NCBI GenBank assembly: GCA_002269645.1
Contig: NIVC01002709.1
Span: 146,780 to 210,779 of the forward strand
DNA length: 64,000 nucleotides
Source of the DNA: Macrostomum lignano
Taxonomy: Eukaryota
Direction: 5' to 3'
Below the pieces are notes generated by a model. It searched no databases and was not told where the DNA came from. It saw nothing but the letters and a program-made list of their open reading frames with translations. Below are positions 3,045 to 28,980 of the stretch, piece by piece (the stretch's first letter is position 1; each line of letters starts with the position of its first letter). Position numbers and translations under genes: made by a program.

Positions 3045-3409
3045 AGCTGGCTCTGTAGCTGGTGCCCTAGAGGGTAGTTTTACATTTTCCCTTAGATAAA
3101 TAGTTGCAAGCGTTGATTTTAGATGTAAGAGCATTGTGTATGAATAGATCTTAGTAGACATTAACAAGCTTGGCAGAACTGTTCAGCGTGAGTTACTATA
3201 ATAAGAACCTCGGGAGACAACTGGAAGCATTTTTATTGAGAATTTAGATTTTTTCGGAGGATGAGCACCCTGCGCTGATGATTTAAAGTCTTTGGGATCT
3301 GGTAGCACGTTGCGAATTGAATGTGGGCCCCATGGGGAGAAGAATGCAGATTATTTTCTGATTGTTTCGAAGATGCTATGGGTGGATGTCAGTGGATTAT
3401 ATGACACCT

Positions 3410-3612: not shown

Positions 3613-4355
3613 AAGGACAGTTGGAGAAAGTGCAATCGAGCGAATGGGCCACGCCTATAGTGTGTGTCAGAAAGCAATCTGGAAGTATCAAGATTTGTGG
3701 CGACTATAAGATAACACTGAACCCAGTCTTGGAAGACATGGTAGCGACAACGCCATCGATAGATGAAGTGATGTCCAGATTGGGTCGAGCCCGGAAATTC
3801 TCCACGCTAGATCTCACAAACGCATACTTGCAGGTACCAGTCGGCGCCGAGACAAGTCAGATGCAAACTTGGAGCACACCCTTTGGCCTGTTTCGTCCAA
3901 CCTCACTGGCTTTTGGGGTAAAACAAGCACTCGCTATCTTCCAGTCATATATGGATAAACTCCTGCTAAACCTCGACGGCGTGATATCCTACCAGGACGA
4001 TATCCTCATCTGGGGCGAAAGTCAGACTGATCATGACGAAAGGCTCAACACAGTAATGAAGATCCTGGAAAACAATGGACTTCGCATAAATGCTGACAAG
4101 TCTGTACTAAACAAGTCGTCAATATGATTTTTGGGCTACGAGATCAGTGCAAATGGAATTCGCCCACTAAAGGAGGAAGTGGAAGCCATTGCCGGATTAA
4201 AAGAGCAAAGAGACCTCACACAACTACAGGCGTTCTTGGGAATGGTCGATTTCTATGGACGATGCATTCCTAACTTGGCTACGTTGAAAGATTCATTGAC
4301 CAATCTAACCAGGTCAGGTGTGCGATGGACCTGGGGAAGGTAAGAACAGAAGGCA
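3613..4355 (+). pseudogene. Ty3/Gypsy reverse transcriptase fragment
   Basis: GQLEKVQSSEWATPIVCVRK..ICGDYKITLN..FSTLDLTNAYLQ..YQDDILIWG..(stop)FLGYEISANGIRP..FLGMVDFYGR..WTWGR(stop)EQKA. In-frame stops at 4125 and 4341; truncated at both ends. Confidence 0.9.
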
Positions 4356-5572: not shown

Positions 5573-5638
5573 GGGCTCTTCTATCTTCTTCTTCTTCTTC
5601 TTCTCCGTTTATCGCCTTGCGGCGTGGAGTGAACAGCG

Positions 5639-8600
5639 TCAGGCTTCACCGCAAGTGCGTTTGTGTCGCGCCATGTTTGTCGCCGATAACGTTCTTCCGC
5701 ACTTGTCGCATTCTGCTGTCTTCCTTCGGTATTTTCTTGCTCTTCTCTTGTTCTCCTCCATCTCCGGTGGATTGTGGTGTTGTTCTTTACATGTCTTTCT
5801 GTGCCTCGCTAGGTTCGATTTTACGATTGTGCTTCCACATTGCTGACATTTTACTCTTGACGCATCTATTTCCGTCTCGCCTTGGCACACCTTCTCATGG
5901 TTTGCCAGGGTCGCTTCCTGTCGGAACTCCTTGTCGCATTTGTGGCATCTGAATTTCACCGGCTCTTTAAACACGCGATGCATCCTCTTTTGGTGGATGG
6001 TTAGTCCCCCTTGCTTTTACACACTTTGCCGCAGAGTTCGTATTCGCATTTGAAGCCATCTCCAACCTCTCTCGGGTTCGTTTTTACGTGGTACCGTTCT
6101 TGACTTCGTTCGATCAGGCTGTTGTTACTGTCCGTCTTGGCCTTTTTTCCTTGCACTCTCTCCCACTCTTGTAGGTGTACAGTCCGCTGGTGTACTACGT
6201 TCCGCCAGTGTTTCCTGTCTAGAACGTGGCGTTCGATGTCTTGCGGTTCCATACCGGCTTCCCGGATGAGGCGCTTCCAGTAGGATATGGTGTTGTTTTT
6301 CCGTTTTTTGCGCTTAGGGATCCTTTCCAGGCCTCTGTACCACCCTAATACGGCTTGCTTTATTTGTCTGTCGTCTTCCATCCGTAGGACGTGGCCAATC
6401 CTTTTTAGGTGACTTTTCTCAATCTTTGTTCTTAATGACACAACACCTAGTTCGTTGCGGATATCTTGCATATTTACTCCTAGGCTTTCCATTTCGCGCA
6501 GCGGTTCCATTCTCTTGTTGGACCAAATGTTGCGGTATGTTTTGTCGATGAACTGTTGCATTTTCTTGATTTCGCCGAGCAGGAACGGGCGGGTGTTCGC
6601 ATGGAACAGGAGTACACTTTCCACGCACGCCTCGACCACTTTAGCTTGTGTGGTCTTTTTCAGGCGGCATCGATGGAACCTTTTCCTGATCGCATTCCAC
6701 GCTTTGGCGGCTCTCTGGATTCTTTGCTGTGTGTCGTATCTCCTATCCATCCACGACCCTAGGATGCGAGTTTTACCTCCGACGGATGTTCCTAGGGCCA
6801 TCTCCTCCTGTTTCTCGTCATTTGTCAGTTCTTCGAACTTCTTCATATTCTCTTTGGTCGTTGTTAGGCTTCTCGTCAGTTCTCTGCCATTGCCTAGGAT
6901 GGTGGTGTCGTCTGCAAAGAGCGATGAGGTCCACTTGACCGTTCGCATCTCCGAGTTGTACTGGTTGATTCTCTGAGGTGGCAAGGAGTGTCCAGGTAAG
7001 TACGTCCATTCCACCCCGCAGCTTAATCCTCTGCTGGCCGCTTCTGTCTCCCGAGTTTCTTCCGCTTTCCTGATGCTCGCCTGGTGGTAGATGTTAAATA
7101 ATATCGGGGAAGTTGGGCATCCCTCGCGTAAGCCTCGCTCGGGTAGCCATGTTTCGCTTGATTTCTCCTTGCCTTGCACTTTATACGCGGTATGTTCATG
7201 CAGGTCTTTCAGTTTTTCGATCGTCTCTTGCGGCATCTTGTACGCTTGGAGGATTCCCCACAGGATCGGCTTGCACACTCTCGGATATGCCTTACGGAGG
7301 TCTAGGAGGATTGCCGTTTCTGTGTCTTCGATGTTGCAGTCTCCTGATGCTCTTTTTGTTTCCAGGTACTCGGCAATGTCCTCGTGCATCCTGGTGAATA
7401 TCTGTGCGTTGTCCGCCGTCGATCTTCCACTTCGGAAGCCGTTCTGGTTGTCATCTAGCGCTCCTATCACTTCTGCCCAATTCCGGATTCTGGTAGCCAG
7501 AATGCGGGCTAGTATTCTGCTGAGCATAGGTAATAGGCAGATTCCTCTGTAGTTATTCATGTCTGCTCGGTCTCCCTTCTTGAATAATGGAATAATGAGT
7601 CCAATTTTCTCGTTGTCATTCCATTTGTGCGCTCGCTCTTCAAACAGAAAGCGGATCCTTGCATACAGTTCTTTACGTACTGCGTCTGGGGCGATTCTAA
7701 TGTATCTGATACGAAGTTCGTCCTCCCGGGACTTCGGTCTTTCATTTCTTTAATGGCTGCTTCTATTTCAAGGTCCGTTGGGACTGTCGTCAGTTGTGTT
7801 CTTGTCTTTTCCGTATCTTCCTGTTCCTTCATGGTTTTGATTGATCTGATCAGTTCGGCTGTTTCGGTTTCCGGGTTTTCCAATCTAGTCCCTTGGATTC
7901 TTTCCAAATGGTTCTTGAAGTCATCTTCGTCAAAGTTGGTGTCTGTTCCGCTGTTGTTCCACTTTCCTCGCTTGTCCAACATCCTTAATTTCTCATAGAC
8001 CACTGCGATCTGGCCTCTATCCGCGGCATTTCTGCATTCCTCAGCGATTGCGTCCCACCAGTTTTCCTCCCATTCCGCGAGCTTCTTTTTTATCTTTTTT
8101 CGGATAGTTGTAGTCGCTAGGCGGGCTAGGGTCGTCGCCGCCGAGGTGGGGTCTTCTCTGACGCATGCGTTGCGATGGGCCAGCGTTTCTGCCAGCTCTC
8201 TTTGTTGTGCCTCGTGTTCGTCCAGGTGGGGGGCCATCCACGGGTTCGTTACTCGTGTCACCGTGCCGCATACGTGCCTTGCACTGTCGATGATTGAGTT
8301 TTGAACGTCTGTCCATTTCATGTCTGTGAGGTTCCTGTCCTGCTTCTCTCTTAGTTCTTCGAATCTTGTTAGTATTTCTTTTTTTAACTCAGATGCCTTG
8401 TTCTCGTCGTGGAGTTTCCTCCAGTCGATGTTCTTCCGCCTGCGTCTCGTCTGGTCCTTGACGTACTTGTTCCGTGTCCAGCCCCGAATTATGACGGTTT
8501 TGGGCAGGTGGTCCGACAAGTTGCACTTGTTGTGGTTCTTTATCGTTTTGACCAGGCGGTGTCTGTCCTGCGCGCGAGTTATGAAGCCGTCTATCTCATA

Positions 8601-9689
8601 CCACGTGCCGGTGCTTGGATTTCTCCAGGTTCCCCGGTTTTTTGACTTGTGGAACGAGTTGATCCAGGCTAGATCATTTGTCACTAACCAGTTTGCGAGG
8701 TCTTCGCCCTGCTGGTTGGTCAGTGCTAAGCCAAACTTTCCTCGATGTTGCGCGTCTGTGTTTTCAAATTTGCCAATCTGTGCGTTCATGTCACCGCCAA
8801 TGATGATTGGTTTGTTCTTTCTTTCATTATGAATGTAACGTTCCAGGGTGTTTCTGAGCTCTGCTAGTTCCGTTTCGTAGTCCGGAGTGCCTCTAACTGG
8901 GCAGTACACGCTGATCAATGTCGCGTCGTATATTTCTATCATGATCGCTCTGTTCGTAATCTTCTTTTTTGATCCGCTGTCCTTCCACGTCTGGTACAAT
9001 TCCTGGTTTAGGATGATGCCTGTTTTCTTGCCGTGAATCAGGAATGAATTCTGTTTCGGTTGGTGGTAACTTCTTATTCCGTCTGACGGTACCGATAACT
9101 CCGAGATGAGGGCTACCTCCCAATTCTCACTCATAATCTTTTTTGCGATCTCTCCAAAACGCGTGCCGAACACGTTTGCCCGCTGGACATTCCATGTTGT
9201 TATTCTCAGCTCGTTGTTTAATGTTTCTCTGCGTTTGTTAATCTTCTTCGTTCTTCTTGTTCCACGGCGTCGGGTTCTTCTGATTAGTCTGCTTTTCTTC
9301 TCTTTTTGGGTTTTCGGTCGTTTTGTGCTTTTTCTTGGGTTTTCGGATTCTTTCTTTGGTCTTTCCTTCCTGTTTGGTCCTGGGTTCTTCTCTACTGTCG
9401 TCAGCTGTGCTTTCACTTTCGCCGACCTTTGTTTCCGGCTTGGTCTTGTGCGGCTCTGCTGTTCCTCTAGCTCTCTACCTTTGTGCTGTCCACTGGTTTT
9501 TGCCTGGTTAATCTCGGTACCCAGGTCGGCTACTTCTGGGTACCACGAGTGAAAAGGGCCGGTGTCGTCGTACTGGCTTCCGCCAGTGGCTTCGATCCAT
9601 GGTCCCTTCCGTTTGCTCCCTTCTTTGCCAAGACTTTTTCGGGTCTTGTCCACTGGCCACCTCGTGAAGGTGGGGGAACAATCGGCCAG
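5639..9689 (-). CDS. LINE polyprotein: basic leader, APE endonuclease, reverse transcriptase, four zinc fingers; two 1-nt frameshifts
   Basis: APE motifs TWNV, ISE, GGDMNAQIG, IDGF, SDH. RT motifs IIPLFKKGD, YRGICLL, QNGFRSGRS, LDLRKAY, GLREGCPTSPILFN, FADD. C-terminal Cx4Cx12Hx4H plus three Cx2C..Hx3C fingers. Adding one base in the G/C runs at ~7725 and ~6007 joins ORFs 7557-9653, 6001-7560 and 5639-5983. The frame is open to the element's 5' end. Confidence 0.85.
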
Positions 9690-9690
9690 C
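9613..9690 (-). ncRNA. HDV-like self-cleaving ribozyme at the LINE 5' end
   Basis: Hand-folded, numbering from G1=9690. P1 GCUGGCC/GGCCAGU with G1-U wobble; P2 UUGUUCCC/GGGAGCAA; P3 ACC/GGU; L3 UUCACGA; P1.1 UC/GG; P4 CAAGAC/GUCUUG; J4/2 G-C-AAA with putative catalytic C at 9627. G1 directly abuts the TSD. Confidence 0.85.
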
Positions 9691-10626
9691 GGGCTCTTCT
9701 ATCTCCTCCTCAATGGCTTCATCGTCAACGGCATCATCGTTGAGCTCCTTCGCAATGTTGTGTAGGACACAGCAAGCGACAATAAATGTCGGAACTCTTT
9801 CCAACCGGACACGGCACATGTATTTGAGGATCGGAAAACGTCGTTTTAATTGCCGAAATGTATTCTCAATTACGACTCGCGCCTCTGAATGTCGCTTGTT
9901 GAAGTACACTTCGTCTGGTGCTCCAGGATTCCGGAATGGCTTCGTGAGGAAGGGTGTGATGCCGTAGCCCTCGTCTCCTAGTAGCACTATCCCTGTTCTA
10001 TTCGACAGGTCTGCGTAGATGTCCGGATTTTTAGGAATGCGATTATCGTGAACAGACCCTGGCCAAGACGCGTCAATACTAGTAAACATGCACTTCTCGT
10101 TCGTTGTGGCCTGCACATTTAAGGAGGCATACCCTTTTCGGTTCACGTACTCATTGCCAATAACACCAGCAGGCTTCTCGATCTGCACGTGTGTGCAGTC
10201 AATCACTCCAATGGCAGACGGGTATTTGTACTTGTCAAAGAAGCTCCGCTTGGCTTCTTGAATGGTTTGTGGTGACTCAGTTGGCCACTTAATGAACGAT
10301 TGTGCTTCGCCGTAGATAGCTTGTACAACTTGCCATGCCGTTTTAGAAACAGTCATCTGGTGTATGCCAAACTCACGAGCTACGCCAGTCTGAAAGCCTG
10401 GATTGGCGAGATATCTGAGAGCCACCTCCATGCGTTCAACAGGTAGAAGTGCACCATCACGCGTTTCACGACCAGTGCCAATGAATCTTTCCGCGAGAGC
10501 TTCTACACTATTTCGATGAAAGCGAAACAGACGCCGGTATTCGTCGTCCCGATACACATCTGAGTGATGACGCTCCAAATACAGTTTCCGCCGAGCAGGC
10601 GCTACATCAGGCATGTATTCGGCCAT
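9691..10626 (-). pseudogene. Harbinger (HARBI1-like, DDE_Tnp_4) transposase, N-terminal 312 codons
   Basis: ATG 10626; IGVIDCTHV, RKGYASLNVQA, WPGSVHDNRI, LLGDEGY, IENTF, CCVLHN motifs. The listed 372-aa ORF is chimeric because it reads on into the LINE after ..EEEIEEP. Confidence 0.92.
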
Positions 10627-13702: not shown

Positions 13703-16700
13703 TCAGCTCTCAGCATAGTAGTAAACCGACTGGAAGAAATAAAAGCTTCTGAGTTAATCTCACCTGAAACACCTGCTTAATAAAAACTGAGTCTCACGTT
13801 GGGGTCGGGCGGCTTGGCAGCAGCCAGCAGCTCCACGGCCGCTCCTTGGCTGGTGACGCCAGCGGAGGCGGCGGCTGCTCGGGTCCGCTTCAGCACCGCG
13901 GCAGTCGCTGCGCCGCCCACTGCGACGGCTGCGGCCACCAAGCAGCTGATGACGACTGTCAGCAGCACACCGCTGTCAGAACTGCTTCTGCTTTTGGCGC
14001 TCGCTGAAGAACAAAATGTACTTTGTGAGCAGTGATCGAACCCTGTGAGCATTCTCACACAAACCAAAACTTGAATGCTCACGGAACACGGCTCGAACAG
14101 TCCTCGAGCTCTTCACCGGTGAGAACACAGCGCCGAGACCGGGCCAGCTCTGGCTGATCAGACACGTCACAGTGACCTCATCCTGTCGCTCAAAGAACTG
14201 GTGAGTCAGTCGAGCTCTCCGAATCCAGCCTCCGTGGCTGCCTCTGAGATCGGGCTCAGGAGTGAGCTGCTCAGTAACATCGAAGGTCAAGTAGAGGGCC
14301 GTGAGTTATGACATTGAGAATGCATGTACAGCAATGATGGACAGCAGCTTTGGTAGCAGCAAACATGAACTCACTGTGAGTCCTTCAATGCTGACTGTGT
14401 CGGACTTGATGGAGCAGTGCAGCTCGGGCCTCGGGTTTCCCTCCTGTGTCTGTCCCAGCAGACTCAGCTCAGAGCCGTTCAGCAGCTGGCCAGTCCAACC
14501 GATGCTGTTCGAAGGAACTGCAAGACAGTGCAATGACAGTTTTGCCTTCCATTTTGGTAAGTTACGTCGGGCTTGAACCTGTAGCTAGTGCATGCTTTCT
14601 GCTAGAATTTCGAGAGGTTCCTTCCTACTCACAGAACACAGTAATGTTTTGTACGAAATGTTACTCATTATCTCGCTTATCTATCACGTCTCCGCACATC
14701 ACGGAGCGTCCGTTAATTCGCAAACAGCGTAGCGGGTCAGGGTTCCCGATACCATAATCTTTGGTCCTATTCAAGTACAAGCTAACAACAGGCACCATTG
14801 CCACAGCATCAATTAAAGGCTTAAAATTCAAAACGGGAATAAATCATTGTGTTCAGAGCTCGGTGCAGGTCTCAGTCATTGGTTCCATGAGTTGAATGCT
14901 CAATAAGGATAAGGATAAAGATTCGTTTTTTACCCATCGCGAAAAGGTATATCATTGATGCATAATTCATTTCTGTCGACTGACAGTCTATGCCTCTAAA
15001 CAGATTAAATAATAAATCAACAATGAAATGGAACAAAGTGTAATTCACAAGTACGTTTCAATTGACACACCTGCAACAGGGCTCAGCAGGTAATTACTTA
15101 CTTATTGTAACAAGTATGAAGCTGAAAACTCACAATAGACAGTAACGTTCTGTGTGAATCTGCCATCCACATCTTCGAGGCCATGCTGAGAGACCCTGCA
15201 CTCCAAGGAGCCTCCGTTCATCTGCCTTGTGGAACTCCAGCTGAACTCAGATTCCACCAGCGTCTCAACGCCTAGATTTTGAGCCTCGGGGGTGTTTTGG
15301 GCCCTGGTCATGCTGGTGCTGAGACCCTCGGCTGTCCGCAGCCAGCACCGGTGACTGGGCTCAGGGTTGCCACCAACTGACCGAACTGAGACTGACACGG
15401 GCTCGCCCTCCTTCATCACCAGAGGCTGAGTTGCATTCCATGAGCTGCTTGACGCGTCTGTTTTCGTGCAGGTGCGAGCATGGATGGCTAATTGTCTCAG
15501 CAATCTGAGTTGCTAATAGATCAGAGATGCTGAACTGCAATCCACTCACATGACACATCGAGTTGCTCACTGCTGACATTCTGATTGAATACAAGTGTGC
15601 CGTCTGTACGAGTCTGAGCGACCTGGCAGATGACTCTCATCTGGTTGTGGCTGGCCGATGCATTGAGTCGCCACACTGATGAAGCATTTGACTCAGATGG
15701 CAGCTGGAGTCAACAGAGTCAGTAATTTATAAATTTATGCATAATTTTTGCATTGACAATTCACAGTGAGTAACTCACTCTGAGCTGTTTCAGATTGGCT
15801 CCACCGATTGAGCAGAAGTGCTGAGCAGGCGGATTTCCTGTTTCCAGAGTCTGCAGGGTGACTTGAGCTTCTCTTCCACTGCGGATTCGTCCAGGAGGCA
15901 GCTTGATTGACAGGCCGGAGCTGCGGTCTGAAATGCAGTTCGGTATGGCAGTCAGGTGAGCTGCATTGGATCTAACTGGTGAACTGGTTCCGCATTGGAT
16001 CTAACTGGTGAACTGGTTCCGCATTGGATCTAACTGGTGAACTGGTTCCGCATTGGATCTAACTGGTGAACTGGTTCCGCATTGGATCTAACTGGTGAGC
16101 TGGTTCCGCATTGGATCTAACTGGTGAACTGGTTCCGCATTGGATCCAACTGGTGAGCTGGTTCCGCATTGGATCTAACTGGTGAACTGGAGAACATGCA
16201 TCCAAGAACAAACAGAAGTACATGGACACTTACACAGAACTGCAGGCAGCTCGCGACGAGCCGTTACATCGAACAGTCCTGACTGGTTCACCCGACACAA
16301 AATTGATGCTGAGCTTCCCCAGCTCCTGCTCACAGTCACTGAGAATGTGCTGCTTGAGTTCGTGCTCTGAAAAGAGTCAGTTTTCACAGCTAAATTTCAG
16401 ATCATTGTTGCCATGCACCCAATACACAGGTGCAACCATGGGCCAGTGTGAGACTCACTGACAGCAGCTGAAGCGCTGTGTTTCCATTTCGCTGTGACTG
16501 CACAGAGCAGCTGTGGCTGATTGGCATCCAGTAGCAACCCGGTGTGTCAGCTGTCAGATTGACGGCTGCTCCGTCTGTCCAGCTGGTGTTTGCGGGGAGC
16601 AGAAAGTGAGTGGTGCAGGGCTCTGGAAGGGTTTGAGTAGTGAGTGGTGCAGGGCTCTGGAAGAGTTTGAGTAGTGAGTGGTGCAGGGCTCCGGAAGGGT

Positions 16701-18465
16701 TTTAGTAGTAAGTGGTACAGGGCTCTGGAAGAGTTTGAGTAGTGAGTGGTGCAGGGCTCTGGAAGGGTTTGAGTAGTGAGTGGTGCAGGGCTGTAAGCCT
16801 GGGTTTGTAAGCCTGACTCACTGGCTGACTACACACCCAGTGTGTGCGAAGTGCCAATCGCAGTCCCACCGTTGCAGCTGTGTCGGCACTTTAAAGCCGC
16901 CCCGTGCATTTCCATTTGCACTGTAAAAGTTCTCAGAATCAGAGAGCTGGCCATGACCTCCCTCTGCAATGCGAACGCCCACCGGTGCTGTTAATTCCCA
17001 TATCTGGTGCAAGCTCAAGTATTTATCTCAATCGAACTCTTACCGAACTCAACTCCAAGAGGTCACTGCCTTTCCGCATTCTGATGCTGCAGTTTGATGC
17101 AGCAGGTGCTCTGCAGTTTCCTGGCAGCCGAGCTCGAATCATCACTTTCTCATTGAGCTTGAGCTGAGACAAGTCTTCCACAAAGCATCCCCTGGGTTGT
17201 TCTTTACAGAAGTCAGCTGGAGAGCAGCCAGAGCTGCTGTCTCTGTTACGCTGAAAGCAGTCACTTTTCTCAATTTCAAGCAGCACAAAGTTCATCATCT
17301 TGTCAGTCTGATTGGCCACGAACTTCCTCAGCAGCACATACTGCGCCATCTGCAATGCGATGCTGCAACACTGCGAATTCCAATATTGAAAGAGTTGCAG
17401 CAACTGGGTGACAAACCTTGCCATCGGCCTCAGCTGAGCAGGTCACTTCATGCACCAAGTGCGACCTGAGTGAACTGCTGCTGTCATTTCTGGTGAAGCC
17501 GCAGTGTTGTGATCCGGACAGACTGTGACTGAAAGCGGCTGCAGTGCAGTTGGGTGCATCCTCATCCAGACCGGCTGGCTTCTCCTCACTGAGCAGCACT
17601 TCGATGCCCAGGGCTCTGTGGCTGGCTGAGAAAAGTTTAGTGAGCAAAATCTGATTTCAAAATATCGTTCAGATTGATACTGAAATATGCGTAGGACTCA
17701 CCCTCCTGTCTCCCATAGACAGTGATGGAGCGCACTGGGACACTTCGGGTCAGCTTCAGCAGCAGCCACTGGTAGCCGGAGGGGTCCGGAGTGTCGCTGG
17801 TAAGAAAATAGGCCCATTGCCCCGGCTTGTCCATTGATCTGATGAAGCAATCGCAGAATGCGTGATTGAAGACAGACGATTGCCAGGCATTGGCGATCTC
17901 AGCTCTGGAGACCTTGATGGCACAGCCTATGGATGTGGAGGTTCAACAACTTCGAAATATGACCTGTTATGAGACCATTTTGCGTTGTTTACGCTTTTGT
18001 CACAGTCAGCCAATTAGATAGAACTGCACGTAAGTCAACTACAACTCCATGGACATTTGCTCCATGGACAGCTAAAGCAGAAGAAAGTTTTCAGTGTTTT
18101 TTTAACTTCTGAACTTCTGGATTCAAAATATAGCAAGTATGCCTTGTGTCCGAGGTACGCTCACCAGTTTACCAGTACGATTTCACTGGAACTGCTACCG
18201 GAGACCGGCAGATAAACACACAGTTTCAGTGAACGAAATCTCAGCTGTTTCTGGTTGTAGTGTGCAAATTCTCCCCACAGAATTTCCCAATGGCGAAACC
18301 TCATCCAGAGCTTAGTTCTCAAAAACTGAAAACTTTCAATCCCACTAATCAGCATCAGCAAAAATAATTGAATTCTTTAAGGAGAAACAGTCGTAGTCAC
18401 TTACTGTTACTTATACAGTACGAAATGATTGCAAGGCACAGAAGTTCCTTCATGTGGACAGTCAT
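13703..18465 (-). CDS. Copy A: 14-exon type I membrane protein (~808 aa): signal peptide, F5/8C/F-type-lectin-like domain, ~5 atypical Ig-like domains, TM, short tail
   Basis: Exons 18465-18405, 17926-17702, 17625-17417, 17349(or 17370)-17044, 17003-16822, 16582-16459, 16366-16234, 15927-15779, 15703-15550, 15457-15134, 14517-14375, 14266-14083, 14003-13798, 13729-13703. All introns GT-AG, all phases compatible, no internal stop. SP MTVHMKELLCLAIISYCISNSCA; lectin-like AWQSS..QWLLLKLTRSVPVRSITVYGR..AQYVLL..LLEIE; C2-set-like GGNPEP..LECRVSQHG; TM GVLLTVVISCLVAAAVAVGGAATAAVL-KR; tail ..PPDPNSVYYYAES*. Confidence 0.8.
15961..16190 (+). repeat. 29-bp intronic minisatellite (GCATTGGATCTAACTGGTGAACTGGTTCC), intron 7 of copy A
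   Basis: About 8 head-to-tail units; about 9 units at 34496-34748 and 51356-51608. Confidence 0.95.
16606..16792 (+). repeat. 34-bp intronic minisatellite (AGTGAGTGGTGCAGGGCTCTGGAAGGGTTTGAGT), intron 5 of copy A
   Basis: About 5.5 units; one unit fewer at 35168-35322 and 52028-52182. Confidence 0.9.
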
Positions 18466-18565
18466 ATCGCAGAGCTGTACTTTGTAAAATAACAATTTTA
18501 CATATAAGCTGCTGCTAGCAACAGCTGTGGTATCGCTGGGCCTCCCAACCTTAGTCGAGCCGATG

Positions 18566-18692
18566 TTTATAGGAAAGCGGCAGGGCTGCGTGTGGAGGCG
18601 GAAATGCAGCCGCAGCCCATAGGCTGGAAGAAGATTGGCTGGCTCTGGCTGGCTGCAAAACAGGCAAGCGAGGTGCGAGATTGGAGGCCAAT
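18566..18692 (-). promoter_or_regulatory. Putative core promoter of the lectin/Ig gene (TATA plus CCAAT boxes)
   Basis: Minus-strand TATAAA at 18566-18571, ~100 nt upstream of the ATG. CCAAT at 18634-18638 and ~18680, and an inverted CCAAT at ~18688. Retained in copies B (~37097-37223) and C (~53963-54103). Confidence 0.5.
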
Positions 18693-18919
18693 GAGGCTGG
18701 CGAAGATGGCGGAATCAGCAGCTTCTCTCAGCAGTGAGGGGCTTGAAGAAATGTGAGTACAGAAGATCCTCATTCATTTTCTGCCTGCCTGGGGGGTCTT
18801 TCTCAAAAGCAACTTATGATCGGCCATAGACGTAAGTTGGGGAGGAAGTGCCTGTGCTATAGAATCAAGAGTAATTTTAAGAGCTAGGAGGCTCCTTTAA
18901 GGAGACCATTTTAGGAGAC

Positions 18920-19114
18920 CAGTGGCGGATCCTGGGGGGGGGGGGCAAGGGGACCATGGCCCCCCCTCAGCTGCCTCGAAAAAAATTCTGCTCTTGGCCT
19001 TTGGCCCCCTTCTACCAGTAAGTAAAGAAAGGGCTTGGGCCTTGGGGTGGGTTCCTACTCGGGGCAGTATGAAAAAAGTTGGCCCCCCTCAATAAATTCC
19101 TGGATCCGCGCCTG
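18920..19114. mobile_element. hAT-type MITE with 8-bp TSD
   Basis: Ends CAGTGGCGGATCC / GGATCCGCGCCTG; TSD TAGGAGAC at 18912-18919 and 19115-19122. The empty single-copy site is seen in the third unit at 54282-54289. Confidence 0.9.
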
Positions 19115-19582
19115 TAGGAGACCTCATAAAGGTTTCTGCAAGTGCTAAAGAATAAGGATTGAGGAGTTGGAGCTACTGTGGGTGCTGGGTGTTGCCGTTT
19201 CGGAGTGAATTTTAGGAGTGCGTGTCCTATAGAAGGAGCGAATTTCATTTCTAGCTCCTAACTCCGATAGTTAAGATTTCAAGGGCCAAATTGTACTCTT
19301 AGGTTAGTAGGAGTGTCTTTTTGTCATGTTTCGGACAGTGACCTGGGCTCTGACGATAAAGAAGCCAACGTTTGGCGACCCAGGCAATTCAGGCAAAGGA
19401 TAAACTCTTCGAAGAATTTCGTACTGCATCTCGATTTCGGCTCAATAAGAGTCAACGCCAATTTCAACAAACATGTTGCATCTTAAAGCATCACGAATCA
19501 GCTTAGATTCCGACATGTACTATTTTCTGTGAGCTGTTTTGCTGAGCACAATATTTACCACTTTTATGGTCTCTAATAGCAC

Positions 19583-20080
19583 TCTAAGTACGGCGTGGTG
19601 GTCGAGCTAATGAAAAACAACGACTTTCTAGTCAAGCTGACCAGCGGCCGGGTTCTTCGGAGAAACCGAAAGTTCCTACGGAGAAGGTTTCCAGCACATG
19701 CGGCGGAAGCTCGCTACCAGCCCAATACTGGCCCTGCGGACTCGCAAGGTACGAATGGAGCCAGAGGGCCGGAAGGACGATCAAGACCGTGGCATACGAG
19801 AAACCGTCGGCCACCCAACAGGCTTCAGATTGACCCCCGCAAAAGTTCGTACGACTGACTGACAAGAAGTCACATTGTAACTGAAGGGGGAGGTGTTGTG
19901 TATGAGTGTGCATATGCATGTGTGTGACACTGAAGCTTGGGCTATACTCGTATGAATATTACTGTCTATGGTATAAATACACGTGACGGCCTAGAGAGAC
20001 GGCCATGCCCTCTGAGCTTTAGTTTCATCAGACCGCGCGCTATAGAAGATATAACCCTCTCGGCTTCGCGATATATAACA
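19583..20080 (+). mobile_element. 3' end of a Gypsy LTR retrotransposon (integrase C-terminus, PPT, 187-bp LTR)
   Basis: ..LVKLTSGRVLRRNRKFLRR..RNRRPPNRL..; PPT GAAGGGGGAGG at 19883-19893; LTR TGTTG..TAACA at 19894-20080. Absent from the third unit (junction 54750/54751). Confidence 0.85.
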
Positions 20081-21064
20081 CCTTCACCCTTCTTATACAA
20101 TATTTCTTATACCAGAGTTAGTTGTTTATCAAATGGGAGCAATTAACTAACGATAGCAGTTAAACCATTTACTATTGACTTGGTCTATCAACTAATTAAA
20201 TGCGCAGGCTTGTAGTCTAAAATGGTTTTATTGCTTTACACGCTCGTAGCTCACGAGAGCCGCTTTTCACAGGGCAATAAAAGCTTGTTGTTGTTGCATA
20301 CTCCTTAAAAGTGCATATATTTAGGAGGAGTTTAATATAGCACGCAGATTGGCCAGACTTCTTAGCCAATCACGCATCGGCAATTCTAGGATTGCAATCT
20401 GTGAAACTTACTCAGGCAGAATAAAACAAAACAAAACCAATTCAGACAATCTTCAAAACTCCTAAAACAAAAAAATTTTCAGCTTCAGTAATACTTTATT
20501 TTTGCAACGCTTTATTCGCATTTCTGATTAACGGAGTAATAAAACAATCAGATAAGAGTTATCAATCAGTCAGTCAATCAGTCACTGGAACACACGCAAG
20601 TCAGAGAGGCAAGCAAAGCTACTCAATCAGTGATTATCAAACGCCATTGGCAGGAGTCGGACTCCCCATCGGTTCTGCTGTGGAGCTCAAATGACAAAAT
20701 AAAAAGTTAAAACAAGGAAAAGCGAGGCGATCGACAGAAATATTCGGCGAAATGTTTCAGCCAGCAGTCCGAAAAAGGGGATCAGGCCGCAGGGAGGATG
20801 ATAAACAGTTTATAGCAGTGCAGGTGCGCTTAACCGATTGGTGCAGCTGCACCAGAGCAGTGCAGTGCCCGGTGCGAGGGTGCAAATCCTGCGGCTCTGA
20901 TCCCCTTTCCTCAGGGCAGTGCTGAACGGCCATGCAAAAAGAGCGAAAAGTACACAAACCGTCAAGTAAAAGTGCAAGCGGTAAAATAAATCTATATTTC
21001 GATACATATCGGTAGGTTGCATTCGCTGAAACTCTTGAAACTCAGTCAAGAGATAAGAGATACA

Positions 21065-21575
<511 letters not shown>

Positions 21576-22095
21576 TATTTTAGTGTTTACTAAATAACAC
21601 ATTAAACCATTTACATTTCCAGTTAAACAAAAGGTCTTCAGAACTTGGGCTCCAACAACCAAAGAGGAAATCCAAATAAATCAATATCTCAAAGCTCAAT
21701 TCCATTGCCAACACTCACAGAGAAGTGCTAGAAGAAGTGGCTCATCAGAATCAAAGACTCCGGAATGCTTGCAGTGTGTGAAGAGAGACGGATATGCATA
21801 GAAACAGCAGAGGTGCATTAATCAGTTCTGATTGTTAGTGCTGGATTTCAGTAAAAAAGAACATAAGCTAAAAACTGTACCAGTTAAAATGATGAATAAC
21901 AAGCATCGAATTTATGGCATTTTTATGTACAGGAAACCAAAATTAAATGAAATTTGGAAGTGAATCATGTTGCACATACAACAAATAATGTACTCATTTA
22001 GTATGACTGCCTGTTAAATTAGAATGGATTGCTAATCTACAATAGCATACAGTAAGACTAGCAATCCGATTATAGATAAAATTTGTGGCATAAAA

Positions 22096-23168
22096 ATCGG
22101 CATACAGCTTCAGTGAGCATTCTGTTGACTTCGCGGACACAGCGGTCGCCAGGTCATTAATATACACCAGTCAGAGGGTGGGGGCGAGAACGCTACCCTG
22201 TGTTAGGCCCTCGTGGAAGATGCGCTCCTTGCTAATGCTAATGCTAATTGCTAATGCTAATGCTAATGCTAATGCTAATGCTAATGCTAATGCTAATGCT
22301 AATGCTAATGCTAATGCTAATGCTAATGCTTGCTAATGCAGTTGTTCACGCGCACTCTGGCTCGGCGATCCGTCAGAAAAGTGCGGATCCTGCGGATGAC
22401 GTCTCTTTGGACGCCGAGTTCCCGCAGTTTCTTTTACAGTGCCGCGCGCCAGACTCTATCGTAGGCGCGGCTGAAGTCGAAAAGACAAAGAATGGACCGG
22501 AGATGCGGGGTAGACTCCAATTTGTCGAAAATTTCCTGACAGGTGCTCGCAATCAATTCCTCCGTAGAGCGGCCCTTGCCTGAGGTTTCGAGGGCATGGC
22601 GGAGACGCTGGAGGACCAGCCGCTTTGCCAGTTTGGCTATACAACTCGTGAGGGCGACTGGGCGGTAGGAGTCAGGCTTGCTGGCGTCCTTTCCCTTTTT
22701 TGGAACGGAATGATGATGGCTCATTTCCATTGCCAAGGACATTCCCCCTTCTGCCAAGAGCGGTTAGTGATGGACAGGGTCCTGTCATCCGTGGAGGGTG
22801 GGGGTGCTTTAGCATTTCATTGGTGACGCCATCCTGCCCGGGGGCCTTGCAGACTTGCGGATGGCATTACAGTGCTCCGGGTTGCTGAAGGGCGAGCAGA
22901 TACCACTTCGAGCTCCGTGCCCGTCACAGCAGTGTTCTTTAAGCACCTCGTTGGCTGGTCGGGTCACTGGGCGGTCCCTAGGGCTGGTTGCGACCCTGGA
23001 GACGGCGCTGTAGATCTGACAGAAAAGATTCGCCTTCTCTAGATCGGTACTCGCTGGTCTGCTGGGTGCGACGGGTCCCATTTGGGGGGGGGGGACTCGC
23101 TGCTCGGGTTGCTTGGGCCTTCTCCCCGCATTTGCTACTGAATGGCTAGAAGCAGCAAATGTAGGCAT
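22096..23168 (-). pseudogene. Non-LTR retrotransposon RT fragment, decayed and interrupted by (TTAGCA)n
   Basis: KKGKDASKPDSYRPVALTSCIAKL..GRSTEE..LFDFSRAYDRVW..LTDRRARVRVNNC[repeat]SKERIFHEGLTQGSVLAPTL*LVYINDL..LYAD. Copies at ~40637-41709 and ~56413-57497. Confidence 0.85.
22230..22337 (-). repeat. (TTAGCA)n hexamer repeat inside the RT fragment
   Basis: (GCTAAT)n on +; also at ~40771-40878 and ~56546-56667. Confidence 0.95.
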
Positions 23169-23269
23169 TTTTTATTGAATTTTTAAATCACTGAATCGGA
23201 AAGAGCAACTATTTGGGAAGCGGAAATCATTCACTGTTTTTGTCTTTGCTTTTATCTCTGTGTTGGCTG

Positions 23270-23625
23270 GCGGGCGAGGTGGGTGAAGGAGTGAGGTGGG
23301 TGATGGTAGTGAGGTGGGTGAAGGAGTGGGATGGGCGATGGTAGTGAGGTGGGTGATGTTAGTGAGGTGGGTGAAGGAGTGGGATGGGTGAAGGAGTGAG
23401 GTAGGTGATGGTATGAGGTTGGCGATGGAGTGGGATGGGAGAAGAAGTGAAGTGAGTGAACCAGTGAGGTGGGTGAAGGAGTGGGGTGGGTGAAGGAGTG
23501 GGTGGGTGAAGGAGTGGGGTGGGTGAAGGAGTGGGTGGGTGAAGGAGTGGGTGGGTGAAGAAGCTGGTGGGTGAAGGAGCGGGTGGGTGAAGGAGCAAGT
23601 GGGTGAAGGAGCGGGTGGGTGAGAG
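23270..23625 (+). repeat. G-rich degenerate repeat (GGTGGGTGAAGGAGTG-like)
   Basis: Read directly; also at ~41811-42165 and, shorter, ~57600-57790. Confidence 0.9.
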
Positions 23626-23744
23626 AGTATGATTAAAGTAGGCCTAATGTTACCTAGGGGATAAGGTTGATTTACTAATTTTTCGACTGCATACAAAGCA
23701 AATCAGTTTAAAGAAGATCAGCCAAAACTAGTTTTTACTAAATA

Positions 23745-24457
23745 CACAGATACATAGATACATAGATGCATAGATGCATAGGTACATAGATACATAGAAA
23801 CATAGATGCATAGATAAATATATACATAGATACCTAGATGCATAGGTACATAGGTACATAGATACATAGATACATAGGTACATAGGTACATAGGTACATA
23901 GATACATACGTACATAGGTACATAGTTACATAGATATATAGATACATAGATACATAGATACATAGGTACATAGGTACATAGGTACATAGATACATAGATA
24001 TATAGATACATAGATACATAGATACATAGATACATAGGTACATTGGTACATAGGTACATAGATAAATAGATGCATAGATACATAGATCCATAGATACATA
24101 GGTACATAGGTACATAGGTAGGTACATAGGTACATAGGTACATATGTACATAGGTACATATGTACATAGGTACATATGTACATAGGTACATAGGTACATT
24201 GGGACATAGGTACATTGGTACATAGGTACATAAATACATAGGTACATAGGTACATAGGTACATAGGTACATAGATCCATAGATACATAGATATATAGATA
24301 CATAGATACATAGATGCATAGGTACATAGGTACATTGGTACATAGGTACATAGGTACATAGATACATAGATGCATAGATACATAGATACATAGATACATA
24401 GATACATAGATACATAGGTACATAGGTACATAGGTACATAGGTACATAGGTACATAG
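23745..24457 (+). repeat. 8-bp (ATAGATAC/ATAGGTAC)n satellite
   Basis: Read directly; also at ~42286-42990 and ~57914-58640. Confidence 0.95.
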
Positions 24458-25489
24458 GTCCGACTAGATAAGTAGGTTTTTTGAGACAATAAATTTTCAA
24501 GTCTTTTCATTCTTCGCATCCAGCATCATTTTCGAAATTAATATTCGCCTCTACTACTTGTAAAAGTAGCAGGTAGCAGTTAATCATTAAGAAATTATTA
24601 ATTTTGTGTAAATAATCTTCATTTCGAAATTGCATGCCCCAGCAAGTCAACGAATAATCGATGCACATGTGACTGAATAAACAATTAAACCTGTGTTTGG
24701 ATGTGGCTTACAATGTTCAGAGTGGAAAGGTGGAAATTTTAGACGAGCATTTCATTCCAAGGATTTTTTATTTATTAATTTGTAAGAAATTCTGCTTAAC
24801 GTAATCTATTTTTAGTAACAAAGCAGCTAAAAGCAGAAAACTAGTGGGACGCCAAGGTCTGTTAAATAAAGCTACTCAAATCACTTAAAGGGTTGTTTGT
24901 GATTCCTCTTGTCACGTTTTCAGTACGTGAATTCTAGGATCTGCTTCAGGAATAACTTTTCATCCACATGGCCGGGGTGAGAGGGAATATCAGGCAATCT
25001 CCTCCTCTGGCAAGCATGCTTTTGCTATTTTAGTAGCTAAATAGCTAACCCTCAGGAAAGCCTGCTTATAGATTTATACATGCCTTAGAAGAGAAAGTAA
25101 ACTGGTTCCATTTGCTAGTGGTGCGCATAGCAACTTATTAATGTAATTATCTTAATTGAACTTAATTGATTTAATTAATATGTGTGTAAAAATACAAAAT
25201 TAAATATAAAATTTTAAACAATAGTTTTTAGCCAGGTGTATTAAATATATAAAGATAATTAACATTGGAACAATTGTATTGATAAAATGTATCAGTATGT
25301 AGCAGTGTTAAGTAATTATGAGGCGTGAAGGCAGCAGTTCCGAAGGTTTGTTTTTGTTTAGCAGTTTAGGTTTTGAGTGTAGTTAGGCTTGTTAGACTTG
25401 AGTACATATAGTGTCGGGTGGCTTTATTTAATTTCATAGAAAATTATAAATTTCGGAAATATTCGGAAAGCATGTGCTCAGCAGGAGGG

Positions 25490-28080: not shown

Positions 28081-28980
28081 CACGGTTAAATTGCCTTATA
28101 TAGAAAGTGTTGTTTACACGGAAATTTCTAGAAGGCTGGATACGATAACAGTCCCCCCACGCCGGGGTTGGAGTCCTGACGGAGTAAGGGAGAAGTATCT
28201 ACTTTACATTTACAGAGATGGACCTTGATACAATCGCCTGCTAGTACTGGGTGATACATATACTTCAGGTAGCGACATGTAGGTGTGGTGCTGTCACAAA
28301 TGTTCAGGTTACAATGCTACCAGAATTTCTATTATTGAATCAATAATTTCGGAAACAATCAGGTACTTGTGTATTTTTAGTAATCGACAAGCTATAAACT
28401 AAGGACAGAAAATCGGTCAGGAAGTCACATGTTTACCTCACATATATACACTCATGATTTGTCTGTGGCGTTTCCAACTATATATGGCATTCACCGCTGG
28501 CATGCGATGAGCCGCGCCGAAGGTAAACAAGCCGTGTTTAGCATTACTGCAGCCTTCGGCTCGCTGCCATAAATAGGTGCCAATCTTTCTAAAAAAAGGG
28601 ATCGAGTGGAATTTAAATGAGGTAAAATTATAAATGTATCGCCAACACGACAATCATTGAAATTAATTGAAATTGAAGCCCGGACCGTATTGTGTACTGC
28701 GTGAAACTATGCAAAATGCACAGAAGTGTTCTGTGTCTCCATGCGCTCGAATAGAAACAAACTTTTTATTGAAATTCAAGAGAAAAACAAGAGAAAAGCT
28801 GAGTAACTATACAAAAGATAATTGTTTAAAAACAATTCACTGCACTTTTTGCGATCCTTGATTGAGTTAAAGAATAACATATATGACAAAGCAATAACGT
28901 TTCTGTGAAACATGGCAGCAGAAAACCCAGTGTCAAAGCAAAGATAATAATAATAATTTGACTACACCTTTCTTAACGTG

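What the first reader, a model, noticed from the sequence alone, without database searches (positions are those of the whole stretch)
9613..9690. HDV-like ribozyme defines the exact 5' end of the LINE and overlaps an AUG-less ORF
Seen: every HDV element can be paired by hand (7-bp P1 with G1-U wobble, P3 ACC/GGU, 7-nt L3 UUCACGA with U-G spacing, P1.1 UC/GG, 6-bp P4, G-C-AAA junction, 8-bp P2 with a 1x2 internal loop next to P3). G1 is the first base inside the TSD. The pol frame is open through the whole ribozyme, and its first Met lies inside the APE domain. Known: HDV-like ribozymes process the 5' ends of R2, RTE and L1Tc elements and have been reported to support translation initiation. 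Inference: a compact expression module in which the element self-cleaves out of a host read-through transcript (here possibly the co-oriented transposase mRNA), initiates without AUG, and then uses the 2A-like site to free APE-RT-ZnF. The combination of ribozyme, variant 2A and four fingers may define an undescribed family.
Basis: partly seen in the sequence, partly recalled or inferred. Interest (0 to 1): 0.9.

Follow-up and report, generated by a model that had tools for sequence, protein, structure and literature searches.

The report
Self-cleaving ribozyme heads a LINE retrotransposon
The first 78 bases of a 4.1-kb LINE retrotransposon fold into a well-supported HDV-like self-cleaving ribozyme that marks the element's exact 5' end, a known strategy seen here in an unannotated LINE lineage; the apparent lack of a start codon is most likely damage to this copy, because intact relatives start translation at an AUG inside the ribozyme.

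Summary
Window 9690-9613 (minus strand) folds as a complete HDV-like double pseudoknot, and G1 is the first base after a 12-14 bp target-site duplication of a ~4.1-kb APE-RT-four-finger LINE. That LINE sits in the 3' part of a co-oriented Harbinger transposase gene.

Rfam scores it below threshold (31.6 bits against 44). A covariance model built from this one sequence then found matching ribozymes about 400 nt upstream of the APE domain in 11 other lineages of related LINEs. P1, P2, P3 and P4 all covary: 97-99% of cells are paired and 0 of 500 shuffles reach the observed values. In one lineage, four insertions with unrelated 5' flanks all begin at G1.

In five lineages, two of them with intact ORFs of 1315 and 1462 aa, an AUG at ribozyme nt 9-10 opens the long ORF in frame with a 2A site and APE-RT. 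The window copy has AUU there and a shifted frame. It also has two further 1-nt deletions in G-runs, so it is either damaged or mis-assembled. All three frames are open across its ribozyme, so "AUG-less by design" is not supported.

This is a new member of a known kind. The ribozyme-embedded start codon is the part worth testing.

The parts
9613..9690 (-). HDV-like self-cleaving ribozyme, 78 nt; the predicted cleavage site is 5' of G9690
   Evidence: Hand pairing; Rfam RF02682 31.6 bits and drz-agam-1 16 bits; strict descriptor; covariation in relatives
9684..9690 (-). P1 5' strand GCUGGCC; pairs with 9652-9658 (GGCCAGU), with a G1-U wobble
   Evidence: 4 of 7 P1 pairs show compensatory changes in relatives
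9672..9683 (-). J1/2 plus P2 5' strand (GAUUGUUCCCCC). A9-U10-U11 (9682-9680) sits where relatives carry the conserved AUG
9659..9671 (-). P3 (ACC/GGU) enclosing L3 UUCACGA. The L3 U at position 1 and G at position 6 match HDV U20 and G25
   Evidence: P3 is 100% paired, with 2 of 3 pairs covarying. The HDV numbering is from memory
9650..9651 (-). G40-G41 of P1.1, pairing with U24-C25 of L3
   Evidence: Relatives have CC/GG; the L014 lineage has UU/AA, a compensatory change
9629..9648 (-). P4 hairpin CAAGAC-CCGAAAAA-GUCUUG
   Evidence: 100% paired, with 3 pairs covarying
9624..9628 (-). J4/2 G-C-A-A-A, with the putative catalytic C64 at 9627
   Evidence: the N-C-A-A-A junction is conserved in all related ribozymes
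9613..9623 (-). P2 3' strand (G68, AA internal loop, GGGAGCAA)
   Evidence: 7 of 9 P2 pairs have changes on both sides and 94.6% of cells are paired
9691..9702 (-). 5' copy of the target-site duplication ATAGAAGAGCCC (14 nt if the preceding AG is counted)
5573..5584 (-). 3' copy of the target-site duplication
5585..9690 (-). Full-length LINE, ~4.1 kb: ribozyme, leader, 2A, APE, RT, four zinc fingers, 35-nt 3' UTR and (GAA)6 tail
9375..9407 (-). 2A-like site QLTTVEKNPGP, with the predicted skip between G and P. T replaces the canonical D
   Evidence: Relatives carry DVEKNPGP, DIEKNPGP, DIETNPGP, TIESNPGP and TIHPNPGP
8502..9197 (-). APE endonuclease domain
   Evidence: Pfam PF14529 (2.5e-11) and PF03372
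6799..7725 (-). Reverse transcriptase domain. A -1 frame break lies at ~7725, where cccGGGagg should have four G
   Evidence: Pfam PF00078 2.3e-18; tblastn with P0001 and P0003
5651..6054 (-). Four C-terminal zinc fingers (one C2H2, three C2HC). A -1 frame break lies at ~6007-6013 in a G5 run
   Evidence: Pfam PF00096. The module is conserved in P0001, P0003, P0008, P0010 and P0011
5585..5603 (-). (GAA)6 microsatellite tail. The target site GAGGAGGAGATAGAAGAG is similarly purine-rich
9516..9544 (-). Hairpin GGUACCCAG / CUGGGUACC with a conserved GUAGCCGA loop, 158 nt after G1
9691..10626 (-). Harbinger/PIF DDE_Tnp_4 transposase ORF, co-oriented and interrupted by the LINE; it resumes at 5572-5465
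   Evidence: Pfam PF13359 1.9e-33

Best explanation
Window 9690-9613 (minus strand) is a genuine HDV-like self-cleaving ribozyme. It forms the first 78 nt of a single-ORF LINE (APE, RT, four C-terminal zinc fingers, (GAA)n tail) that inserted by target-primed reverse transcription into the 3' part of a co-oriented Harbinger transposase gene.

How it works, as inferred. The element is probably transcribed as part of a longer RNA, either from a host or transposon promoter upstream or from an upstream tandem copy. The ribozyme cuts immediately 5' of G1, so the RNA that is copied back into DNA starts exactly at G1 and carries the whole ribozyme with it. In intact relatives the long ORF starts at an AUG embedded in the J1/2-P2 strand of the ribozyme (nt 8-12). 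It then runs through the ribozyme and a 90-110-codon leader to a 2A (NPG|P) ribosome-skipping site, which would release APE-RT-ZnF.

The window copy is a damaged, or mis-assembled, member of this lineage. The AUG is AUU, the leader is frame-shifted relative to the ribozyme, and two further 1-nt deletions in G-runs break the RT and the pre-finger region. Its apparent AUG-less ORF is therefore decay rather than a mechanism.

Shown here: the fold, its covariation, its position at the element boundary, and the conserved in-frame AUG and 2A. Inferred only: cleavage activity, co-transcription, use of the embedded AUG, and 2A activity.
For: Fold and position:
- The fold is complete and the core nucleotides are intact.
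- G1 directly abuts the TSD.
- Rfam gives 31.6 bits with an HDV model.

Relatives:
- A single-sequence CM from the window finds ribozymes in related LINE loci: L010 41.3 bits, L008 36.1, L001 26.8, L006/L012/L018 22.7.
- A second CM adds L004, L013, L011, L014, L003, L034, L035 and L036.
- Where the APE match was mapped, the ribozymes lie 400-418 nt upstream of it on the coding strand.

Covariation:
- P1/P3/P4: 99% of cells paired, 9 of 15 pairs compensatory, 0 of 500 shuffles reach this, and slid controls fall to 22-42%.
- P2/P3/P4: 97% paired, 12 of 18 pairs compensatory, and 7 of 9 P2 pairs changed on both sides.

Element boundary:
- Four L001-lineage insertions with unrelated flanks all start at G1.
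- The five L014-lineage loci (three distinct flanks) and L036 abut (GAT)n tails of upstream copies.

Start codon:
- The AUG at ribozyme nt 9-10 is in frame with 2A in L034 (1462-aa ORF), L035 (1315 aa), L036, L010 and the L001 lineage.
- In P0011 it is the only AUG upstream of the 2A.
- The AUG is kept while the rest of P2 covaries.

Window copy defects: AUU, the frame offset, and -1 frameshifts in G-runs.
Against: - No cleavage assay or 5'-end mapping was possible.
- Rfam scores are below the gathering thresholds.
- RNAfold energy is not unusual (z = -1.15), although pseudoknots are not modelled.
- No close relative (above 40% APE identity) of the window's own family was found, so the ancestral state AUG rather than AUU rests on more distant lineages.
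- L011 also lacks the AUG, and L003 and L004 have it out of frame while their 2A frame stays open from G1. A non-AUG start in some lineages is therefore not excluded.
- The CM-derived alignments lean towards the model structure.
Confidence: 0.78

Rival explanations
1. One reading: the element truly lacks a start codon, and the ribozyme acts like an IRES to start translation without AUG in the pol frame, which runs through the ribozyme.
For: - The pol frame is open from the TSD to APE with no Met.
- L011, L003 and L004 also have no in-frame AUG before the 2A, yet their leader frame is open or nearly open.
- A near-cognate CUG lies at nt 2-4 in the pol frame.
- Published work proposes that HDV-like ribozymes promote cap-independent initiation in R2 and L1Tc (PMC6765202, PMC12203849).
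Against: - Five lineages, including the only two intact full-length ORFs recovered, start at an AUG inside the ribozyme.
- The window's AUU aligns with that AUG but lies in a different frame from its pol.
- All three frames are open for more than 50 codons after G1, so the open frame is uninformative.
- The copy has two other frameshifts.
Confidence: 0.12
2. A chance resemblance: the stretch is ordinary 5' LINE sequence that happens to fit an HDV-like descriptor.
For: Rfam scores are sub-threshold. The RNAfold z-score is not significant. A loose descriptor gives many chance hits.
Against: - Covariation is seen in all four helices across 7-8 aligned sequences from distinct loci.
- The position is conserved about 400 nt upstream of APE in 12 lineages.
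- The strict descriptor has a false-positive rate of about 0.08 per window.
- The match coincides exactly with the TSD boundary.
Confidence: 0.03
3. The fold is an HDV-type ribozyme by descent but is catalytically dead or weak in this copy, or its DNA also acts as an internal promoter as Pr77 does in L1Tc, so that read-through transcription is not needed.
For: - This copy carries other lesions.
- P1.1 has a U-G wobble, and P2 has a 1x2 internal loop next to P3.
- L1Tc's first 77 nt are both a promoter and a ribozyme (PMC3383444).
Against: - All core positions are intact: G1, the L3 U and G, C64-AAA, and P1.1.
- The same UC/GG P1.1 and an internal loop next to P3 occur in the L001 lineage, which has several intact-looking copies.
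- No promoter evidence could be obtained with these tools.
Confidence: 0.1

Closest known systems
L1Tc / ingi-clade LINEs of trypanosomes (L1TcRz / Pr77)
   Same: An HDV-like ribozyme occupies the first ~77 nt and cleaves 5' of +1. The element has a single ORF with an N-terminal 2A, then APE-RT, then C-terminal C2H2 fingers, and a ~12-bp TSD (PMC3185411, PMC3383444, PMC6765202, PMC3708506).
   Different: L1Tc has an RNase H domain, a 5' UTR downstream of the ribozyme and a poly(A) tail. Here Pfam finds no RNase H, the tail is a microsatellite, and in relatives the ORF starts inside the ribozyme. Promoter activity was not tested.
Ribozyme-terminated insect and nematode LINEs: R2, R4, R6, SART, Baggins, RTE (Ruminski et al. 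2011; Eickbush & Eickbush 2010)
   Same: An HDV-like ribozyme sits at the exact 5' end and processes a co-transcript, with a proposed role in cap-independent translation (PMC6765202, PMC8256844, PMC12203849). The list of families is from my memory of the JBC abstract; that paper was not held.
   Different: R2, R4 and R6 use an RLE endonuclease and are site-specific. None of these is reported with a 2A or four C-terminal fingers. This lineage was found in marine metagenome and invertebrate assemblies, and it shows 2A, PHD and microsatellite-tail features of the CR1 group.
2A-carrying single-ORF APE LINEs of the CR1 group (Crack, CR1, L2, Rex1; Odon et al. 2013)
   Same: - A 2A-like NPGP lies in the N-terminal region of a single ORF2-like protein.
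- E-to-H variants (IHPNPGP) are typical of Crack, and P0003, P0004 and P0011 carry them.
- Some members have a PHD domain between 2A and APE (P0005, P0010).
- The hosts are marine invertebrates (PMC3708506, PMC3894237).
   Different: Those papers do not mention a 5' ribozyme or where translation starts. Clade membership of the window element was not tested by RT phylogeny.
Perere-3 (RTE) of Schistosoma mansoni with a 5' twister-variant ribozyme
   Same: An APE LINE with a self-cleaving ribozyme at its 5' end and a TSD, and a fixed ribozyme-to-AUG distance (PMC8501958).
   Different: It uses a different ribozyme class, has its AUG about 112-147 nt downstream, and has no 2A.

Membership tests
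HDV-like self-cleaving ribozymes | Nested double pseudoknot: P1, P1.1, P2, P3 and P4 in the canonical order | tested here: met
   All helices pair by hand. Covariation supports P1, P3 and P4 and P2, P3 and P4. P1.1 changes UC/GG to CC/GG to UU/AA across lineages.
HDV-like self-cleaving ribozymes | Catalytic C in J4/2 followed by A-rich nucleotides; U at the first L3 position and G near the L3 3' end | tested here: met
   C64-AAA at 9627-9624 and L3 UUCACGA. N-C-A-A-A is conserved in all relatives. The correspondence to HDV C75, U20 and G25 is from memory.
HDV-like self-cleaving ribozymes | Score at or above the Rfam gathering threshold of an HDV-family model | tested here: not met
   RF02682 scores 31.6 bits against 44, drz-agam-1 16 against 37, and there is nothing at gathering. 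These models were built from distant members, so this lowers the database call but not the structural case.
HDV-like self-cleaving ribozymes | Mg2+-dependent self-cleavage 5' of nt 1, giving 5'-OH and 2',3'-cyclic phosphate ends | not testable with these tools
   Only indirect evidence: the element boundary coincides with G1 in the window and in four independent insertions of a related lineage.
Ribozyme-terminated non-LTR retrotransposons | The ribozyme begins at the first nucleotide of a full-length element bounded by a TSD or variable flanks | tested here: met
   The TSD is at 9702-9691 and 5584-5573. L001, L006, L012 and L018 have unrelated flanks up to G1.
Ribozyme-terminated non-LTR retrotransposons | The element encodes an endonuclease and a reverse transcriptase | tested here: met
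   Pfam PF14529/PF03372 and PF00078.
Ribozyme-terminated non-LTR retrotransposons | Co-transcription with upstream sequence, with no promoter of its own | not testable with these tools
   The element is co-oriented inside a transposase ORF. Relatives often follow the (GAT)n tail of an upstream copy.
2A / StopGo ribosome-skipping peptides | C-terminal motif D(V/I)ExNPGP in the N-terminal part of the polyprotein | tested here: inconclusive
   The window has T-V-E-K-N-P-G-P, with D replaced by T. Relatives have the canonical DVEKNPGP, DIEKNPGP and DIETNPGP. The position, 91-109 aa from the embedded AUG, is somewhat further than the 40-80 aa reported in PMC3708506. Activity was not tested.
Ingi / L1Tc clade | RNase H domain after the RT; RT phylogeny | tested here: not met
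   Pfam finds no RNase H in the window ORFs or in intact P0010, P0011 and P0001. Phylogeny was not run.
CR1-group LINEs (Crack / CR1 / L2 type) | RT-domain phylogeny placing the element in the group | not tested
   No reference RT set was available, and the supplement of PMC3708506 is not held. The microsatellite tail, single ORF with 2A, optional PHD and E-to-H 2A variants are consistent leads only.

The most novel reading that the evidence does not exclude
This may be a broad LINE lineage of marine animals, missing from annotated protein databases, in which the start codon of the only ORF lies inside the HDV-like ribozyme. After self-cleavage that AUG would sit 8-9 nt from the 5'-OH end. The ribozyme fold would then have to act as a cap-independent ribosome landing pad and be unwound by the first ribosome. 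That would couple 5' processing, RNA protection and translation, while a 2A discards the leader peptide that the ribozyme-constrained codons encode.
Probability: 0.35. Interest if true: 0.65.

Novelty: new member of a known kind. Interest (0 to 1): 0.5.

Why it matters
How uncapped, 5'-OH, ribozyme-processed LINE RNAs get translated is still unresolved for R2 and L1Tc. This lineage offers a compact test case. It has a 73-100-nt ribozyme with a conserved AUG at nt 8-12, no 5' UTR to speak of, and a 2A readout about 100 codons downstream.

The result also links two separately described features of invertebrate LINEs: 5' HDV-like ribozymes and N-terminal 2A peptides. Outside trypanosomes these had not, as far as I could find, been discussed together.

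For annotation, it shows that ORF callers mis-start these elements, and that the ribozyme gives a base-exact marker of full-length copies.

Tried and rejected
- Rfam at gathering thresholds found nothing in the window. Rfam E-value scans of L003 and L004 missed ribozymes that the custom models and hand folding found.
- RNAfold energy against shuffles was not significant (z = -1.15). This is uninformative because the pseudoknot is not modelled.
- My first, loose descriptor gave about 20 chance hits and missed the real site because of the P2 internal loop. I replaced it with a stricter one.
- MAFFT alignment of two ribozymes misaligned P2 and P3, so CM-guided alignments were used instead.
- Alignment A6 picked up three AT-rich false hits from the window's tandem repeat and was discarded for A7.
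- P2 could not be counted on A7 because its columns were out of register. A third model with P2 nested solved this.
- No ribozyme could be recognised in L002 (P0003) by CM or by hand, although it shares the GUAGCCGA hairpin. None was found in L005 either.
- No second copy of the LINE exists in the window, and no relative closer than about 40% APE identity exists in the searched collections.
- Clade assignment failed. The RTclass1 supplement is not held, the Ruminski 2011, Eickbush 2010 and Eickbush 2015 papers are not held, and database hits carry no useful names.
Full report
**What is at the coordinates**

Read on the minus strand from 9690, the sequence is GCUGGCCGAUUGUUCCCCCACCUUCACGAGGUGGCCAGUGGACAAGACCCGAAAAAGUCUUGGCAAAGAAGGGAGCAA.
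- P1 is nt 1-7 with nt 33-39, including a G1-U39 wobble.
- P3 is ACC/GGU around a 7-nt L3, UUCACGA.
- P1.1 pairs U24-C25 with G40-G41.
- P4 is 6 bp.
- J4/2 is G-C64-AAA, with C64 at 9627.
- P2 is UUGUUCCC/GGGAGCAA plus C19-G68 across a 1x2 internal loop.

Immediately 5' of G1 lies ATAGAAGAGCCC (9702-9691). The same 12 nt, or 14 with the preceding AG, recur at 5584-5573 right after a (GAA)6 tail. The element therefore spans 9690 to about 5585 (~4.1 kb), and G1 is its first base.

The target is the 3' part of a co-oriented Harbinger/PIF transposase ORF (DDE_Tnp_4, 1.9e-33). That ORF resumes in frame after the 3' TSD copy.

The LINE encodes APE (PF14529/PF03372), RT (PF00078) and four C-terminal fingers, one C2H2 and three C2HC.

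**Is it more than chance?**

- Rfam finds nothing at gathering thresholds in the window.
- In a permissive scan of 9400-9900, the F. prausnitzii HDV model gives 31.6 bits (gathering score 44, E 4.3e-4) over exactly 9690-9615, and drz-agam-1 gives 16 bits.
- By my own scaling, that E-value would be about 0.05 for the whole window, so Rfam alone is not decisive.
- RNAfold energy is not unusual (z = -1.15), as expected for a pseudoknot.
- A strict HDV-like descriptor required P1 of 6-7 bp, P3 of 3 bp, an L3 starting with U, P1.1, a P4 stem, a CAAA junction and P2 of at least 5 bp. It gives one hit in the real window, the ribozyme, against a mean of 0.08 in 12 block-shuffles.

**Relatives**

- The pol protein has only a handful of relatives in the 5.8-billion-protein collection. 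All are from ENA or Logan assemblies, at 30-40% identity.
- A second search with the intact relative P0001 found 13. Only one is an nr entry, a mollusc hypothetical protein at 21% identity.
- A metagenome scan with an APE alignment returned 29 loci.
- Relatives share the architecture of 2A, APE, RT and four fingers, sometimes with a PHD-like insert after the 2A.
- No RNase H domain is detected.

**The ribozyme is conserved, and so is its position**

A covariance model built from the window sequence alone found ribozymes in these loci:

| Locus | Position | Score |
|---|---|---|
| L010 | 89-166 | 41.3 bits |
| L008 | 6-83 | 36.1 bits |
| L001 | 2618-2690 | 26.8 bits |
| L006, L012, L018 | - | 22.7 bits |
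| L014-L017, L019 | - | 20 bits |

A second model, built from the first hits, added L004, L013, L011, L003, L034, L035, L036 and a second site in L001 at 2231.

Where the APE match was mapped, the ribozymes lie 400-418 nt upstream of it on the coding strand. In the window the distance is 487 nt.

The strict descriptor found 10 sites in 349 kb of window plus loci. All are these sites, and there are none elsewhere.

**Covariation**

On the CM alignment A7 (8 sequences, with P1, P3 and P4):
- 99% of cells are paired, against 82% in shuffles.
- 9 of 15 pairs have changes on both sides.
- 0 of 500 shuffles reach the observed values.
- Sliding the partners drops pairing to 22-42%.

On A8 (7 sequences, with P2, P3 and P4 nested):
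- 97% of cells are paired.
- 12 of 18 pairs are compensatory.
- 7 of 9 P2 pairs are changed on both sides.

Examples of P1 are GCUGGCC/GGCCAGU, GCUCGGU/ACCGAGC, GCUUGGC/GCCAAGU and CCUUGCC/GGCAAGG. Examples of P2 are UUGUUCCC/GGGAGCAA, UGACUUC/GAAGUCA, UGGUCUUCC/GGAAGACCA, UGUGUGU/GCACACG and UCUGGUUCG/UGGACCAGA. P1.1 changes from UC/GG to CC/GG and, in the L014 lineage, to UU/AA. J4/2 is N-C-A-A-A throughout.

These alignments are fitted to the model, which favours pairing. The slid controls and the hand-read helices say the same thing.

**Does the ribozyme define the 5' end in other copies?**

Yes, in relatives.
- Four insertions of the L001 lineage (L001, L006, L012, L018) have unrelated upstream sequence, and homology starts at G1.
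- The L014-lineage loci, L010, L018, L001 and L036 directly follow (GAT)n, which is the tail type of these elements. They therefore sit head to tail behind another copy. That is the arrangement in which a 5' ribozyme would cut units out of read-through transcripts.
- In the window, the purine-rich target resembles the (GAA)n tail. This fits tail-target microhomology during priming, which is an inference.

**The "AUG-less ORF"**

The sequence facts are right: the pol frame is open from a TAG in the TSD, and its first Met is in APE. Three results change their meaning.

1. Relatives carry an AUG at ribozyme nt 8-12, in the J1/2-P2 strand, in 10 of 12 lineages, even though the rest of P2 covaries. 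In L034 this AUG opens an intact 1462-aa ORF, and in L035 an intact 1315-aa ORF. In L036, L010 and the L001 lineage it is in frame with the 2A, which ends at aa 91-109, and with APE. In P0011 it is the only AUG upstream of the 2A.

2. The window has AUU at the aligned position (9682-9680). That codon is in frame offset 2 from G1, whereas the window's 2A and pol frame is offset 1. Offset 2 is the frame that corresponds to the relatives' ORF through the ribozyme; compare IVPPPS... with MVLPPS... in P0011. A 1-nt deletion between about +12 and +150 would reconcile the two frames.

3. The copy has exactly two other frame breaks relative to P0001 and P0003, at ~7725 and ~6007-6013. Both are 1-nt deletions in G-runs. 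They are either real slippage mutations or homopolymer assembly errors.

All three frames are open for more than 50 codons after G1, so openness of the pol frame across the ribozyme is not evidence of translation.

I therefore read the window copy as a decayed or mis-assembled member of a lineage that normally starts at an AUG inside the ribozyme.

A residual case for non-AUG starts remains. L011 lacks the AUG, and L003 and L004 have it out of frame while their 2A frame stays open from G1. These are single, possibly degenerate copies.

**The 2A site**

- NPGP is conserved in most lineages: DVEKNPGP, DIEKNPGP, DIETNPGP, TIESNPGP, TI/VHPNPGP, DIHPNPGP and GIERNPGP.
- In the L014 lineage it has decayed to NENPES.
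- The window's TVEKNPGP keeps the key E, and the T for D recurs in other lineages.
- Odon et al. reported N-terminal 2A-like sites in single-ORF LINEs of the Rex1, Crack, L2, L2A, CR1 and Ingi clades. They noted E-to-H variants in Crack and a PHD domain between 2A and APE in some elements (PMC3708506).
- Neither that paper nor the follow-up (PMC3894237), nor a recent 2A screen (PMC12338488), mentions a ribozyme.

**Comparison with what is known**

HDV-like ribozymes at LINE 5' ends are established for R2 and L1Tc, and are reported for Baggins and RTE, with a proposed role in cap-independent translation (PMC6765202, PMC8256844, PMC3185411, PMC3383444, PMC12203849). R4, R6 and SART are from my memory of Ruminski et al. 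2011, which was not held.

L1Tc already combines ribozyme, 2A, APE-RT and C-terminal C2H2 fingers. The combination is therefore not unprecedented.

The present lineage differs from L1Tc in four ways:
- It has no RNase H domain.
- It has a microsatellite tail.
- It has four fingers.
- Its ORF starts inside the ribozyme instead of after a 5' UTR.

Its CR1-group (Crack-like) affinity is only a lead, because RT phylogeny could not be run.

**Verdict**

The ribozyme call and its role as the 5'-end-defining module are well supported. The AUG-less mechanism is not. The finding is a new member of a known kind. Its one feature worth testing is the conserved start codon embedded in the ribozyme, 8-9 nt from the processed 5' end.

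Noticed in passing
window 9516-9544 (minus); L010 ~231-282; L013 ~251-302; L001 ~2429-2480; L002 ~484-535; L003 ~3187-3238: A hairpin with a conserved loop GUAGCCGA (AAUAGCCGAA in L003) lies 136-221 nt after G1 in the lineages where the ribozyme was located; L002 has the motif but no recognised ribozyme. The stems differ in sequence but stay complementary, for example GGUACCCAG/CUGGGUACC against GGAGGGGGAGAUC/GAUCUCUCUCUCC. It is absent from the L001, L004 and L034-L036 lineages. Its function is unknown; it could be a translation or RT-binding element.
   Followed up: partly
L001 2231-2610: A ~380-nt non-coding element starts with its own HDV-like ribozyme (Rfam RF02682 22.5 bits; R2 model 26.3 bits). 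It carries the GUAGCCGA hairpin and ends in a (GAT)n tail directly abutting the next LINE's G1. It looks like a ribozyme-headed non-autonomous (SINE/SIDE-like) parasite of these LINEs.
   Followed up: partly
window ~7725 and ~6007-6013 (minus strand): Both frame breaks of the LINE are single-base deletions inside G-runs (GGG for GGGG, and G5 for G6). This pattern is typical of homopolymer errors in long-read assemblies as well as of slippage mutations, so the copy may be more intact than it reads.
   Followed up: partly
window 13988-64000: The rest of the window is about three tandem copies of a 16.9-18.5-kb unit at 91-99.5% identity (for example 16639-26398 = 35168-44932 and 27626-37322 = 44483-54204). 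Inside it, ~1-kb stretches such as 25418-26639, 43951-44941 and 59615-60657 have ORFs open in 4-5 frames, which suggests low-complexity sequence.
   Followed up: partly
window 3621-4127 (+): An ORF fragment resembling an LTR-retrotransposon reverse transcriptase (MEKVQSSEWATPIVCVRK...YQDDILIWG) lies just downstream of the Harbinger/LINE nest. The region is a pile-up of transposable elements.
   Followed up: no
L014 41-125 (also L015, L016, L017, L019): This lineage's ribozyme starts with C rather than G (P1 CCUUGCC/GGCAAGG) and has P1.1 UU/AA. Its 2A has decayed to DVNENPES, and its APE frame opens only ~200 nt after the ribozyme, with a Met inside the former 2A. It may be a lineage that has given up the leader and 2A arrangement.
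   Followed up: partly
window 9597-9599 (minus): An ACCAUGG (good Kozak context) lies 92 nt after G1, in frame with the upstream transposase ORF rather than with pol. It opens only a 30-codon ORF ending at 9508.
   Followed up: no
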